Shown here: positions 9,409-17,376 of the stretch, in pieces
How positions within the stretch are numbered: position 1 is the stretch's first letter
Layout of the letters: each line of letters begins with the position of its first letter
Source: Podarcis erhardii
Taxonomy: Eukaryota
Direction: 5' to 3' (one strand)
DNA: 64,000 bases
Assembly (NCBI GenBank): GCA_964252035.1
Contig: OZ176212.1
Notes under the pieces: model-generated
What the model saw: only the letters and a program-made list of their open reading frames with translations
The model's database searches: none
What the model was told of the DNA's origin: nothing
Translations under genes and position numbers: made by a program

Positions 9409-12400
9409 ATGGAAGAGAGCTGTCGCACCCCCAGGAACAGCCCTCCTCAGGACGATAAAGCTGCCCCAACTGGCTTTGCACCCAGAATATCGGAAGCCAT
9501 GGCTGAGTACTTGGTGAACACTGTGGCCGGCACTGCCAAAATGGTCCAGGCTTCTGTGGAAGCGCAAAAGTCTGCTCAGGTACCTGAGCCCAGGCTCTAG
9601 GAATGACCAGTATTAGAGAGACTGAATGAGAGAAATAATTCTCTTGCTCAAAACTCCCAATATCATTTCTCAGCCTTTGCACACAGAGAGTACACTGGGA
9701 GTTCGGCTAAAGCAGGCTTCCTCAGACTTGTCCCTCCAGATGTTTTGAGACTCCAGATGTTTCCCACCATCCCTGGCCACTGGTCCTGCTAGCTAGGGAT
9801 CATGGGAGTTGTAGGCCAAAAACATCTGGAGGGCCACGTTTGAGGAAGCCTGGCTGAAGGATAGTTTCTAGCCCAGGACACCCAACCTTGGGCTGAGGGG
9901 TGATTTGAACCCTGAACCCACACACACATATTCTAACACTGGCTCCATCCAATGCCCTGATCACTTAACAAACTTAAGGGTTCATTGGGGAAAGTAATGT
10001 GCTTTAAATGTAAGGTGTGTGTACACAGCCACTGTGACAGGTGTGTAACAACCAGCCTTTAGCACTTTTGCTGCCAGTGTCAAAGGAGGGGGGCTTTTAC
10101 ACTGTGTCACCCATTTTGTGGAAGGAGATCAGCAAGCACCCAACAATAGGGTGCTTTCACAGACTGTTAAACACGTTTCCTTTTTCTTTCTTTTTTTATA
10201 ACATTTTTATTCATTTTCAACAACAATTTTATACAATCCATTCACATTTTATCACACATTCATCTATTTTTTTGACTTCCCTCAGTTTCTCTGCCAATCT
10301 TTCGTTTTAAATTTATATTATTTAACGCATTTCTAAGCTTAATATTGCCTTTAAAAATCACCTCTCCCTTCTTACTCTTTATTACAATATTTCTTAATTT
10401 TTCACAGAGTCTCTTGAAAACCAACAAGCGTTATCTGTTCATCACATATGCTTTTCAGGTAGTCTGTAAATCTCCCCCAGTCCTCGATGAACTTCTGGTC
10501 TCGCTGGTATTGAATCTTCCCTGTTAGTTTATCCAATTCTGAGTATTCAGTCAATTTCGTTCTCCATTCTTCCACCGTTGGAATTTCTTCCTGTTTCCAT
10601 CTTTGGGCCAGAAGTATTCTCGCTGCTGTTACTGCGTATTGGAAAAGTTTACAGTCTTTCTTATTTATTTCATTACCTACCAAGCCTAGTAGGAAGGCCT
10701 CCGGTTTCTTAACAAACGTATATTTCAACATCTTTTTCAATTCATTATATATAATTTCCCAGAAGCCTTTCACCTTTTTACTCTCCCGCCACATATGATA
10801 GAATGTTCCTTCTTTTTCTTTACATTTCCAACACTTATTACATGTTTTATACATTTTAGCCAGTTTTACTGGCGTTATATACCATCTGTATACCATTTTC
10901 ATTATATTTTCCTTCAATGTAGTACAGGCCGTAAATTTTATGACGTTTCCTTTTTCTTGGGCATTTCCTGACTGTTTTTGTTGTTGTTCAGGCTTTTGGA
11001 GTTGCTGCAATTATACGAGTATGTTGACGTTTCAGTGGTTATTTTAATGGTTTTTGCGTATTGTGGACTTCTTTGAGATTTGTAAGCTTATAAATGAAAA
11101 GATATTGAAGATTTGTAAATAAATCAGTATGTAAGATTTAAAAATAAATGAATAAAATTGTTGTCATTTATAAAAGACCCATGGCACGGTTAAGAGTGAC
11201 AAAAATGAGCTCTTTTTATAGCAGTTTTATGTAGGAATCTCTTGTATCTGGGGCCTGGCATGGCTTCTAGAGACAATTGTGTGGGGCTCAAAGCCTGCAT
11301 AGCCGTGACTTGTCCCCTTCTGCCTTCTTTCCAGCTCGCTTGTTTCCATGCAGAGCAGTCCCTGGCCCAGGCCCGGGTGAGCTACATGGCAGCCCGGGGG
11401 TTGGCCGAGCGACTTTTGGGGTTCCTGAACCCCCCTGACTACCAAGGGCTCTTCCAGCTCCTGACAGAGCCCCCGCTACCCTATTCTGAATTCTGCACCA
11501 TCATCCGACGTACAGAAAATGGTTAGTATCAATATCCCTGGTGCTGGGAATTTGTTTTCTGCCTGGACACCCATCGTCTCTGTCGCTGTCCATCTGGATC
11601 CTGCCTACTCCCTCAGTAGCCCTGCCCATTCTTATGGGGGTCACACCCACTGACCCCCATATGTTCACCTACTTCAGGGTCTGCGTGAAGCTAAGAATTC
11701 AGTGGGTGGGGCCTCCATAAGAATGGGCGGGGCTACTGAGAGAGAGTAGGCCGGGTTCAGATGACGTGTGGCACGGTGAATGGAGCAACAGAGCCTTTTT
11801 GTGGGTGGCCCCTCAACTGTGGCATATACAGTGGTACCTCGGTTTAAGAACAGTCCTGTTTTTGAATGATTCGGTTTACGAACTCTTGAAAACCGGAAGT
11901 AGTGTCCTGGTTTGAGAACTTTACCTCAGTCTGAGAATGGAATCCGAACGGTGGAAGGGCACTGGCGGCGGGAGGCCTCATTAGGGAAAGCGCGCCTCAG
12001 TTTAAGAACGGATTTCCAGAACGGATTAAGTTTGTAAACCAAGGTACCACTGTACTCCCCCGAGGAGGCCTGCCTGGAGCTCTTGCTGCTAGAATTATTA
12101 TCGCTCACCATATTTCTGCACTTCACCATGCTATTCCAAGGCAGGTTACAAGAGCTTTAGAAGTACAATATTAAAATGTTAAAATTAATTACAGTCAATC
12201 GAATATGGTGGGCCCTACCATTTAGGGCCTAGAAGAAGTCTTATTTCTGTTTTCCCAGGTTTCTTTTTAAAGAGCTGCTAATGTTACCATTTTTAATTTA
12301 GCACAGTTCAGTTTTTACTCTCTCCTTCAATGGACTGCTGCTGTTTTAGTTTGCTGTAATAACTTGTGGGCAATATTAATAATAATAATAAATTGCTATC

Positions 12401-12802
12401 TTTATTTATTTTCTTACTTTTGCTTCTTACTGCCTTGCCAGCAGCTCTGCACATGTAAATTTGTGTTGAAGGTGCAGGATATATAAATCATTAAAGAAAG
12501 GCACCCCACTGTTTCCTCCTGCCTTGCAGCACTCCTGCACCCTGTTCTGAAGTGCAAGCCAGGATTCCCAGCCAGACGAGAACCCAGCCCAGGCTCTGAA
12601 TTCACCTGTCCGTGAGTGACCCTGTGGGAGGGCCTTGTGGGGCAAACCCATCATTTTAACGTTGGGGAGAGCATGGTGCTGGTAACGCCAAGGTGGCAGG
12701 TTCATTCCCCGTATGGGATGGCTGAATATTCCCATATTGCAGGGGCAGGGGGTTGGACTAGATGATGATCCTCAGGGTCTTTTCCAACTCTATAATTCCA
12801 CA

Positions 12803-15800: not shown

Positions 15801-17376
15801 ATTGACTCTCTGGGCATAAGGTATCAGGGAAAATTGGAGAGGACAGGTGGCAGGGGCAAGAGGAGCAGGATTTGTTTGTTTGATGTATATTTATTACATT
15901 TATGTACAATCTTTTTTTCCCCCCCCAAGCAGCTCAAGGTGGTGTACTTGGTTCTTCCCTCCCATTCCCCCCCCCTCACAGCAACCCTGTGAGGTAGGCT
16001 AGACTGAGAGGCAGTGACTGGCCCAAGATCACCCAGTGAGCTTCATTGGCTGAGTCGGGATTTGAACCTTGGTCTCCCAGGTCCTAGTCCAACACTTTAA
16101 AGTCTGTTATACTACAAGGACTTACAAATCTATTGGTACTGCTTTTCCTGGCATAGGAATGCACTGATGGGAACATTGTCATCAGCTGATCTCTGCTTTT
16201 CTAAGCAGACAAAGAGAGACTGGACAGGAGACTATGTGGAAGGGAGGGAGGGAGGACAGCCTGCCAGGCCCCATCCACAACTTGTGAGTCACAACTCCAG
16301 ACAAGAAGTAGGGTGCCCCTAGGGTTACATTGATTGTACCACAAAGCAAACAGACTTTTAACTGGAGTCCTTAAAGCTGTGAATAATTGCTTGACAGTTT
16401 GCGAGGCAACACATAGTGACACCAGTGGATCTTTTCTGCAAGCTGCGGAATGTTGCATTTGTAGATGCAAATCTAGGGTTTTCCCATTTTATCCCCAGAA
16501 CAACCCTGTGAAATAGGCTATGCCGACAGCAACTGTTACTGGCCTCCAGGTCATCCTGCAAGCATCATGCTTTGTTGTGGATGTGAATCCAGCTCTTCCT
16601 AGTCCAACACACTGGTTGCCATACTTCATAGTTATGCAAAAGCAAGAATTTCAGCAGATGTGGGTCTTTGCATTCCGGCAAGCCACAATCTCTTCTTCTA
16701 TGGAGCCTCCCTCTCTTTCTCCTGTCCTCAACCCAACCTGTGCAGAATGGACCCAGGTATCAGCTGTGACTCCTGCCCACATCCAGGCTGAGGGAGGAGG
16801 GAGAAAGAAGAGGATTTCCCTCATGCGTGGGACTATAGAACACTCCATTTTTCTTATTTTCATAAATTCTGAAATGTTTAGCATCACCACACTCCAGTCA
16901 CGGGTTTTATACTATCATGGCTGGGGGTGGACTGCCAACTTTGGGGGAAGTTGTGTTGCCAGGGATAACTTTAATTTTGGATGTGTTTCAGTGAATATAT
17001 GAAACATGTAAAAGAGCAAGGTCTGTTTCCGTCTGGGAGGGTGGCAACCCTAACCCCACACTTCCAGCAGGACCAAGTCCAGAGCTGGGGAACCTTTGAC
17101 CATAAATCATCACGTTCCTTGGTATAATCATAGCCACATTCTATGCCAAGTAGGAAACAGACTTTTTCAGTGTCAGGGTGGTGGAGGTGCTTGGAAACTG
17201 TGTTTTGCTTCTCATTTTCTTCCTTCCCTGCACTACAGCCCCTGATCTGCTGCCCGTCCCGCCAGGGTGGGCCAGGCAAGTTCCTGAGCAAAGTGTCTCG
17301 GCGCAAGGATCCGCCTCAGCCAGAGAATTCGGACAGCGACACCGACCAGCCAGAGGCTTTGTCTGAGGACACCTGA
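9409..17376 (+). CDS. Unidentified 8-exon protein-coding gene, ~317 aa
   Basis: Exons 9409-9579, 11335-11521, 12877-12955, 13491-13575, 14313-14390, 14925-15014, 15673-15798, 17239-17376. All introns GT-AG, phases 0,1,2,0,0,0,0 compatible, no internal stop. Strong Kozak ccaaaATGg; AATAAA 41 nt after the stop. The exon 6 donor is the least certain junction. Protein not recognised. Confidence 0.8.
9713..9852. mobile_element. hAT-type MITE
   Basis: TIRs caggcttcctcagac / gtttgaggaagcctg. Flanks ggctaaag / ggctgaag resemble an 8-bp TSD (offset by one base at the right end). Confidence 0.75.
10180..10945 (-). mobile_element. 5'-truncated L1/Tx1-clade LINE (ORF2 C-terminal Cys-rich region plus 3' UTR)
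   Basis: Minus-strand ORF ...KENIMKMVYRWYITPVKLAKMYKTCNKCWKCKEKEGTFYHMW...AARILLAQRWKQEEIPTVEEW..., a zf-RVT-like CxxC...H motif; A-rich tail near 10180-10200. Confidence 0.85.
11829..12052. mobile_element. Tc1/mariner-pogo-type MITE
   Basis: TA|CAGTGGTACCTCGGTTT ... AAACCAAGGTACCACTG|TA: TIRs with TA TSD. Confidence 0.85.
12668..12805 (+). mobile_element. tRNA-head / CR1-tail SINE
   Basis: gagagcatggtgctggtaacgccaaggtggcaggttcattccccgtatggg head, then CR1-like 3' end ggggttggactagatgatgatcctcagggtcttttccaactct. Confidence 0.7.
12805..12845 (+). repeat. (ATCT)n tetranucleotide microsatellite
   Basis: About 10 perfect units directly after the SINE tail. Confidence 0.95.
15885..16100 (-). 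mobile_element. Squam3 / Ther1-like SINE
   Basis: caaccctgtgaggtaggctagactgagaggcagtgactggcccaagatcacccagtgagcttcattggctgagtcgggatttgaacc...gtcctagtccaacac. Confidence 0.85.

What the first reader, a model, noticed from the sequence alone, without database searches (positions are those of the whole stretch)
9409..17376. Unrecognised 8-exon, ~317-aa gene between TAOK2 and CDIPT
Eight exons with GT-AG boundaries chain without a stop through phases 0,1,2,0,0,0,0, from a strong Kozak ATG to a stop with AATAAA 41 nt later. The phase 1 then phase 2 junctions fit exactly, which is unlikely by chance. Predicted protein: MEESCRTPRNSPPQDDKAAPTGFAPRISEAMAEYLVNTVAGTAKMVQASVEAQKSAQLACFHAEQSLAQARVSYMAARGLAERLLGFLNPPDYQGLFQLLTEPPLPYSEFCTIIRRTENDQTLAMMAFKEGVMTSGASYPLVPVKEAVVGTLKFKQRFPDPETRKVPGARWQQSQDVDCTEEEDGLSLQIRGRNPSRHKQVSASIDKPPKLQIYALLQPIEEFASFLATEVETVLLEDQMGYVTQRRPRRSPSAGVEGLSPLVSEQDLNTIQPLICCPSRQGGPGKFLSKVSRRKDPPQPENSDSDTDQPEALSEDT. 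It resembles no human 16p11.2 gene I can recall (HIRIP3, TMEM219, PAGR1, MVP, SEZ6L2, INO80E, C16orf92, C16orf54). No CpG island and a very short 3' UTR suggest tissue-restricted, possibly germline, expression (inference). It may be a sauropsid gene lost in mammals or a squamate innovation.
Basis: partly seen in the sequence, partly recalled or inferred. Interest (0 to 1): 0.85.

Follow-up and report, generated by a model that had tools for sequence, protein, structure and literature searches.

The report
Real but already-annotated uncharacterised lizard gene

Summary
Five coding exons are correct (9409-9579, 11335-11521, 14313-14390, 15673-15798, 17239-17376). One 82-nt exon (12530-12611) was missed. 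Exon 12877-12955 was read in the wrong frame. Two exons (13491-13575, 14925-15014) are spurious. A non-coding 5' exon near 6961-7064 was also missed.

The corrected protein has 286 aa. It differs by 2 residues from Podarcis muralis 'uncharacterized protein LOC114582816' and by 5 from P. lilfordi. Support comes from:
- GT-AG sites kept in four lacertid/amphisbaenian genomes;
- dN/dS of about 0.23;
- a 1214-nt, probably RNA-derived, skink-like contig spanning every junction;
- TAOK2-X-CDIPT synteny in lizards, a turtle and an alligator.

Relatives occur in squamates, turtles, alligator, axolotl, coelacanth, a shark and a chimaera. The shark and chimaera copies are intronless, and the chimaera copy sits at another locus. 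No mammal, bird, frog or teleost relative was found. So it is neither unrecognised nor a squamate innovation.

It has no Pfam domain and no sequence or fold relative. It has a confident N-terminal helical domain and a disordered tail with invariant RRSPS and LSPL motifs. Function is unknown. My inferred guess is a coiled-coil, phospho-regulated adaptor.

The parts
6961..7064 (+). Putative non-coding first exon (5' UTR). Both ends are approximate. Candidate donors are AAG|GT at 7056/7057 and at 7064/7065. An upstream ATG lies at 7004-7006.
   Evidence: The first 87 nt of the spliced skink-like contig L008 align here and to the matching P. lilfordi stretch. The P. lilfordi gene range starts at the base matching window 7004. 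A block conserved with Rhineura spans 6743-7612.
9402..9579 (+). Exon 2. The acceptor AG is at 9400-9401 and coding starts at ATG 9409 (57 codons, phase 0).
   Evidence: The L008 alignment starts at 9403, right after the acceptor. It is 100% identical to P. lilfordi and 88% to Rhineura, with the donor GT kept.
11335..11521 (+). Exon 3 (187 nt, ends in phase 1). It encodes most of the helical domain.
   Evidence: phmmer of this exon alone found orthologues at E 3e-24 and 8e-22. GT-AG is kept in 4 species.
12530..12611 (+). Exon 4 (82 nt, phase 1 to 2).
   Evidence: tblastn of P0011 and P0015 hits it. L008 bases 448-524 map here. It is 99% identical to P. lilfordi and Zootoca and 89% to Rhineura, with GT-AG kept.
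12877..12955 (+). Exon 5 (79 nt, phase 2 to 0).
   Evidence: In the corrected frame it matches P0011 residues with no gap. L008 bases 544-607 map here.
14313..14390 (+). Exon 6 (78 nt). The acceptor is a tandem CAG|CAG, which probably explains the annotated 285-aa isoform X2.
   Evidence: Isoforms X2 of P. muralis and P. raffonei lack one Q at this position.
15673..15798 (+). Exon 7 (126 nt). It encodes the family's most conserved stretch, including the invariant RRSPS and SPL residues.
   Evidence: 100% identical to P. lilfordi. Rhineura differs by an in-frame +12 nt. Invariant columns are listed.
17239..17440 (+). Exon 8: coding to the stop at 17374-17376, then a short 3' UTR with AATAAA at 17417-17422.
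   Evidence: L008 aligns through 17439.
13491..13575 (+). Not an exon; it is intron sequence that is open by chance.
   Evidence: Absent from all 17 aligned orthologues and from the spliced contig. There is a 16-nt length difference in P. lilfordi, only 47 of 85 nt align in Zootoca, and there is no hit in Rhineura.
14925..15014 (+). Not an exon.
   Evidence: Absent from all orthologues and from the spliced contig. There is an 8-nt difference in P. lilfordi, a 1-nt difference in Zootoca, and no hit in Rhineura.

Best explanation
Shown: window 6961-17440 (+) holds the orthologue of the database gene 'uncharacterized protein LOC114582816' (Podarcis muralis). It has one non-coding exon and seven coding exons and encodes 286 aa. 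It is under purifying selection. It lies between TAOK2 and CDIPT, as it does in other lizards, a turtle and an alligator. The family is at least as old as jawed vertebrates and has no recognisable domain.

Inferred, at about 30% confidence for the mechanism: residues about 29-122 form a long amphipathic helix capped by two short helices. This domain would pair with a second copy or with a partner as a coiled coil. The disordered tail carries short conserved motifs: RGRxPSxHxQ, RRSPS within RRRSPRRSPS, LSPL, and a terminal acidic SDSD patch. These look like sites for proline-directed and acidophilic kinases. On this reading the protein would be a small phospho-regulated adaptor, made in few tissues because the promoter has no CpG island.
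For: Gene model:
- The corrected 7-exon model is 281/286 identical, with no gaps, to P. lilfordi P0011 and 284/286 identical to P. muralis X1.
- The same GT-AG structure is present in P. lilfordi, Zootoca and Rhineura.
- Against Rhineura, all seven coding exons gave blastn hits at 82-90% identity while the two intronic false exons gave none.
- dN/dS is 0.22-0.24 between lacertids and Rhineura, and 0.12 in the helical domain.
- The 1214-nt contig L008 from run SRR6291263 carries the uninterrupted 290-aa ORF and maps exon by exon.

Synteny and distribution:
- TAOK2-X-CDIPT order holds in five other genomes. CDIPT is confirmed in the window.
- The first search returned 31 proteins (30 besides the query) from squamates to chimaera.

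Structure:
- The AF2 model of residues 22-125 has pLDDT 91.5, with a 57-residue helix. The rest of the protein is below 50.
- Invariant A43, A56, A70 and L84 are spaced 13-14 residues apart, and turtles and fishes carry a 7-residue insertion in this helix. Both fit a heptad register.
- Invariant R218, R219, S220, S222, S229, P230 and L231 lie in the tail.
Against: - No functional evidence of any kind exists. There is no Pfam, PDB, AlphaFold DB or Atlas relative.
- Oligomerisation was not modelled, and the kinase-site reading is pattern matching only.
- Annotated proteins of advanced snakes lack the most conserved tail motif. That argues against an indispensable role for it.
- No expression data exist for this species. 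The spliced contig comes from another lizard family, and its sample type could not be looked up.
Confidence: 0.88

Rival explanations
1. The gene is a strongly diverged orthologue of a named mammalian gene. Candidates would be a 16p11.2 gene, or one moved elsewhere, so it would not be a gene missing from mammals.
For: All big searches were limited either to proteins of 0.55-1.75 times the query length or to a 62-aa query. The profile search scored only 8000 candidates and even lost the shark members. No vertebrate genome DNA could be searched.
Against: Sharks and coelacanth at 29-37% identity were found easily. NCBI's naming pipeline left every orthologue unnamed. No Atlas cluster of 50 or more members scores above 0.62, although a mammalian family would form such a cluster. 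No Pfam family was hit at E up to 1. From my own knowledge, PAGR1, HIRIP3, MVP and TMEM219 each carry a Pfam domain.
Confidence: 0.08
2. The reader's literal 317-aa product from eight coding exons exists as an alternative isoform.
For: All its splice sites are GT-AG and its frame is open in this genome.
Against: No annotated isoform in any species holds exon 4 or exon 6. Both have frame-breaking length differences in sister species and are not alignable in Rhineura. The model also requires skipping the conserved 82-nt exon.
Confidence: 0.03
3. The locus is transcribed but no longer codes for a working protein, i.e. it is a decaying gene.
For: The middle third evolves fast, with dN/dS 0.42. Advanced snakes lack the main tail motif. 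The alligator protein is much diverged.
Against: The ORF is intact with the same length class in more than 15 squamates. Overall dN/dS is 0.23, and 0.12 in the helical domain. All length changes in true exons are multiples of three.
Confidence: 0.02

Closest known systems
NCBI/UniProt 'uncharacterized protein' LOC114582816 (Podarcis muralis), LOC128400908 (P. raffonei), LOC117058054 (Lacerta agilis) and P. lilfordi A0AA35PNB2
   Same: It is the same gene. Length is 286 aa, with 2 to 16 residue differences. P. lilfordi has the same exon structure and the same TAOK2-X-CDIPT position.
   Different: Only point substitutions differ. None of these entries has a name, a domain or any study. A paper search for six other orthologues' LOC ids (not these) found nothing.
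Intronless relatives in cartilaginous fishes (Chiloscyllium chiPu_0007993, Callorhinchus LOC103187233)
   Same: They share the N-terminal helical domain and the C-terminal motifs, at 29% identity over most of the length in the shark and 51% over the C-terminal 85 columns in the chimaera.
   Different: They are single-exon genes of 1023 and 1032 nt. The chimaera copy lies between V-ATPase subunit e-like and RPL26-like genes, not beside TAOK2 or CDIPT. It is probably an old retrocopy.
Named genes of the human 16p11.2 block (PAGR1, MVP, HIRIP3, INO80E, TMEM219)
   Same: Only the chromosomal neighbourhood is shared: TMEM219, TAOK2, CDIPT, PRRT2 and MAZ.
   Different: None of their Pfam domains is detected. 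No mammalian protein was recovered in any search.

Membership tests
Orthologous group of LOC114582816 (unnamed vertebrate family) | Full-length sequence similarity | tested here: met
   281/286 identical to P0011 and 284/286 to P. muralis X1. Hits from E 1e-158 down to 1e-10 run out to sharks and alligator.
Orthologous group of LOC114582816 (unnamed vertebrate family) | Same exon-intron structure | tested here: met
   Seven coding exons with GT-AG lie at matching positions in P. lilfordi, Zootoca and Rhineura. The spliced contig has the same junctions.
Orthologous group of LOC114582816 (unnamed vertebrate family) | Conserved position between TAOK2 and CDIPT, same strand | tested here: met
   The window is collinear with P. 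lilfordi at 95% identity over 21 kb.
PAGR1 / HIRIP3 / MVP / TMEM219 (named 16p11.2 genes) | Presence of the family's Pfam domain (from my own knowledge: PAXIP1_C, CHZ, Vault repeats, TMEM219) | tested here: not met
   No Pfam family at E up to 1 for P0011 and P0002, and none of these domains in the six other orthologues scanned. Nothing was found exon by exon either.
FIGL1 N-terminal domain (PF24347) | Score at or above Pfam's gathering cut-off (27 bits) | tested here: not met
   Exon 3 alone scored 13.6 bits at E 0.06. The match is not reported for full-length orthologues.
Coiled-coil oligomerisation domains (a structural class, not a family) | Long helix with heptad-spaced core residues that forms an oligomer | tested here: inconclusive
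   A 57-residue helix is predicted at pLDDT above 90. Invariant small or hydrophobic residues are spaced 13-14 apart, and there is a 7-residue indel. Oligomer state was not modelled or measured.

The most novel reading that the evidence does not exclude
An unnamed gene at least as old as jawed vertebrates was kept beside TAOK2 in reptiles but lost, or made unrecognisable, independently in mammals, birds, frogs and teleosts. It sits at the point where sauropsid gene order (TAOK2-X-CDIPT-PRRT2) departs from the human 16p11.2 order (CDIPT-SEZ6L2...TMEM219-TAOK2-HIRIP3). The mammalian rearrangement may therefore have destroyed it. Cartilaginous fishes would keep it only as an ancient retrogene. 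Its product would be a new kind of coiled-coil phospho-adaptor.
Probability: 0.3. Interest if true: 0.5.

Novelty: already known. Interest (0 to 1): 0.3.

Why it matters
For annotation it matters little, because the gene is already in RefSeq and UniProt for sister species. Three modest points remain.

First, it is a conserved, selected, domain-less vertebrate protein family that nobody has studied.

Second, it seems to be missing from mammals and birds. It lies in the block syntenic to the human 16p11.2 autism-associated copy-number region, next to TAOK2. It is therefore a marker for how that block was rearranged.

Third, the case is a warning for the scan. A chain of GT-AG exons with closing phases can be a quarter wrong and still look perfect.

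Tried and rejected
- Pfam scans exon by exon and on eight full-length orthologues gave only sub-threshold noise: FIGL1_N at E 0.06, P53_tetramer at 0.15 and Trp_dioxygenase at 0.0015, the last far under its cut-off.
- ESM Atlas feature searches with exon 3, a whole turtle protein and a turtle C-terminal part gave best scores of 0.71, 0.61 and 0.62. This is noise.
- PDB sequence profiles for the whole protein and for the N-domain hit only designed helical bundles, at E of 0.03 or worse.
- Foldseek of the whole model and of the N-domain against PDB, AlphaFold DB clusters and the Atlas gave nothing beyond generic long helices.
- A profile search with 14 diverse members and a search with the coelacanth protein added no new lineage.
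- P0003 and P0005 were set aside as unlikely relatives. P0005 reads as a repetitive helical protein. P0003 matched only in short stretches and its sequence was not read.
- Rfam found nothing in 5000-19000.
- Paper searches for six LOC ids and for the run id SRR6291263 found nothing. A search on 16p11.2 synteny in lizards gave two unrelated papers.
- The coelacanth locus is not on record, and the axolotl gene spans 400 kb so no DNA was returned.
- The full-length window protein was never sent to a search, because a spliced product has no reference. P0011 (98% identical) served as its stand-in.
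Full report
**1. Observation**

The ATG at 9409 lies in CCAAAATGG. The stop is at 17374-17376 and AATAAA follows 41 nt later. There are no N runs in the window.

**2. Is it a gene, and is the model right?**

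phmmer with the 62 aa of exon 11335-11520 against 1.84 billion representatives found three true relatives, with E values from 3e-24 to 3e-9. A search with one of them (gecko, P0002) gave 31 proteins. All are 'uncharacterized' or 'hypothetical'. They come from squamates, turtles, alligator, axolotl, coelacanth, a shark and a chimaera.

- Exons 1, 2, 5, 7 and 8 match.
- The stretch from exons 3 and 4 is unrelated to the orthologues.
- Exon 6 is an insertion seen in no other species.

tblastn placed that missing stretch at 12530-12611, an 82-nt exon with a good acceptor and a GTGAGT donor. With it, exon 12877-12955 is read in another frame and joins directly to 14313.

The corrected model has seven coding exons, 861 nt and 286 aa. 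It is 281/286 identical, with no gap, to Podarcis lilfordi P0011. It is 284/286 identical to P. muralis LOC114582816 isoform X1.

The false chain closed its frame only because 79+85 and 82+79 are both 2 mod 3.

**3. Independent support**

*(a) Comparative DNA.* The window is collinear with P. lilfordi at 95% identity over 21 kb.
- The seven true exons are 96-100% identical to P. lilfordi, 91-100% to Zootoca and 82-90% to Rhineura. Only in-frame length changes occur.
They align partly or with a 1-nt indel in Zootoca, and have no counterpart in Rhineura.
- The same seven exons with GT-AG give an open frame in all three species.

*(b) Selection.* Nei-Gojobori dN/dS is 0.22-0.24 for lacertids against Rhineura. 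By region it is 0.12 in the helical domain, 0.42 in the middle and 0.21-0.23 in the tail.

*(c) A spliced transcript.* Contig L008 is 1214 nt long, from Logan run SRR6291263. Its closest relative is the skink Lerista (87%). It carries the uninterrupted 290-aa ORF with UTRs.
- It maps onto the window exon by exon: 9403-9579, 11332-11519, 12529-12605, 12890-12953, 14313-14392, 15670-15798 and 17236-17439.
- Nothing maps at the two spurious exons.
- Its first 87 nt do not map next to the ATG. They map about 2.3 kb upstream, around 6961-7064. So the AG at 9400-9401 is a used acceptor and there is a non-coding first exon.
- I could not find what sample the run is. That the contig is RNA is an inference from its structure.

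**4. Surroundings**

By collinearity with P. lilfordi, the TAOK2 model ends near window 2046. A CDIPT exon with the CDP-alcohol phosphatidyltransferase domain lies at about 20454-20780 on the + strand. A CD225 (PRRT2-type) ORF lies at 36291-37097 on the - strand, and a C2H2 zinc-finger (MAZ-type) ORF at 54116-55075 on the - strand.

The order TAOK2(+), X(+), CDIPT(+) is found in P. lilfordi, Zootoca, Rhineura, the turtle Mauremys and the alligator. In the turtle and alligator a CD225 or 280-aa gene follows, and in the alligator a zinc-finger gene after that.

From my own knowledge, the human order is MAZ, PRRT2, PAGR1, MVP, CDIPT, SEZ6L2, ASPHD1, KCTD13, TMEM219, TAOK2, HIRIP3. If so, X sits where the two orders part. 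That link is inference only.

**5. Age and distribution**

The shark (Chiloscyllium) and chimaera (Callorhinchus) genes are single exons of 1023 and 1032 nt. The chimaera copy lies between a V-ATPase subunit e-like gene and an RPL26-like gene. The axolotl gene spans 400 kb, so it is split.

The simplest reading is an intron-bearing ancestral gene beside TAOK2 and an old retrocopy in cartilaginous fishes. This is inferred, not shown.

No mammal, bird, frog or ray-finned fish appeared, and no large Atlas cluster resembles the protein. The limits of these searches are set out in section 8, so absence is likely but not proven. Bird copies could also hide in GC-rich, poorly assembled DNA. The alligator protein is already very diverged and rich in Ala, Pro and Arg.

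**6. What the protein looks like**

No Pfam family reaches threshold, and no PDB sequence relative was found.

AlphaFold2 with the family alignment gives a confident N-terminal domain:
- Residues 22-125 have mean pLDDT 91.5 and pTM 0.64.
- It consists of a 57-residue helix followed by two short helices.
- Everything after about residue 125 scores below 50, so it is probably disordered.

Fold searches found nothing specific.

Invariant residues of the helix (A43, A56, A70, L84) are 13-14 apart. Turtles and fishes have an insertion of exactly seven residues in this helix. Both fit a heptad register, hence a coiled coil or tight helical packing.

The tail has invariant S195, Q199, E201, E206, R218, R219, S220, S222, S229, P230, L231 and R263. 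In words, these form an RGRxPSxHxQ stretch, RRSPS within RRRSPRRSPS, LSPL and a basic patch. An acidic SDSD end follows.

From general knowledge, S-P-x-R fits the cyclin-dependent kinase consensus and SDSD fits casein kinase 2. This is pattern reading, not evidence.

**7. Most likely working**

At about 30% confidence, the protein is a small adaptor. Its N-domain would pair with itself or a partner, and its disordered tail would be switched by phosphorylation. The lack of a CpG island fits expression in few tissues. Nothing here points to a particular tissue.

**8. Novelty**

The gene is already in public annotation for at least 25 species, including three Podarcis species. The finding is therefore not new as a gene.

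What remains of interest is that the family is unstudied, old, under selection and seemingly absent from mammals and birds.

Limits:
- No vertebrate genome DNA could be searched.
- The window's own spliced protein could not be used as a query.
- The function is a guess.

Noticed in passing
window 25041-37097; L001 and L007: CDIPT is followed directly by a CD225 (PRRT2-type) gene in the turtle, and by an unnamed 280-aa gene and then a zinc-finger gene in the alligator. The absence of PAGR1 and MVP between CDIPT and PRRT2, noted by another reader for this window, therefore looks like a shared sauropsid order rather than an assembly fault.
   Followed up: partly
P0023, P0024, P0025, P0029 (Crotalus, Pantherophis, Notechis): Annotated proteins of advanced snakes (196-238 aa) lack the stretch encoded by exon 7 (15673-15798 here). 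This is the family's most conserved motif, and the python (P0013) keeps it. The cause could be exon loss, relaxed constraint or an annotation gap.
   Followed up: no
L002:10001-11023 and L003:10001-11032: The shark and chimaera relatives are intronless. The chimaera copy lies between V-ATPase subunit e-like and RPL26-like genes. It is probably an ancient retrogene.
   Followed up: partly
window 7004-7006: An upstream ATG lies in the putative 5' exon and is followed at once by GT. A second P. lilfordi product (P0037, 230 aa) begins M-LACFH, as if this ATG were spliced straight to exon 11335. If the exon instead ends at 7056, the ATG is in frame with the main start. It is not conserved in the skink-like transcript.
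   Followed up: partly
window 7150-7480 versus L005:9800-10110: Rhineura's annotated protein starts M-G-L in a different first exon (ATGGGACT|GTAAGT). The matching window sequence (7366-7383) has neither the ATG nor the GT. First exons seem to differ between lineages.
   Followed up: partly
window 14310-14315: There is a tandem acceptor CAG|CAG at exon 6. It fits the annotated 285-aa isoforms X2 of P. muralis and P. raffonei, which lack one Q.
   Followed up: partly
window 9713-9852, 11608-11744, 11820-12060, 12803-12846, 10160-11180: The introns hold short inverted-repeat elements, a SINE-like unit with inverted ends, an (ATCT)n microsatellite and an AT-rich block. The AT-rich block contains a 202-aa minus-strand ORF (10402-11010) with no Pfam match. 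Copies of two repeat types recur at 9000-9042/16004-16046 and at 9757-9813/17542-17598.
   Followed up: no
L004:1-4982: The P. lilfordi annotation fuses TMEM219 and TAOK2 into one 1312-aa product carrying both Pfam TMEM219 and Pkinase. This is probably a read-through model error.
   Followed up: no
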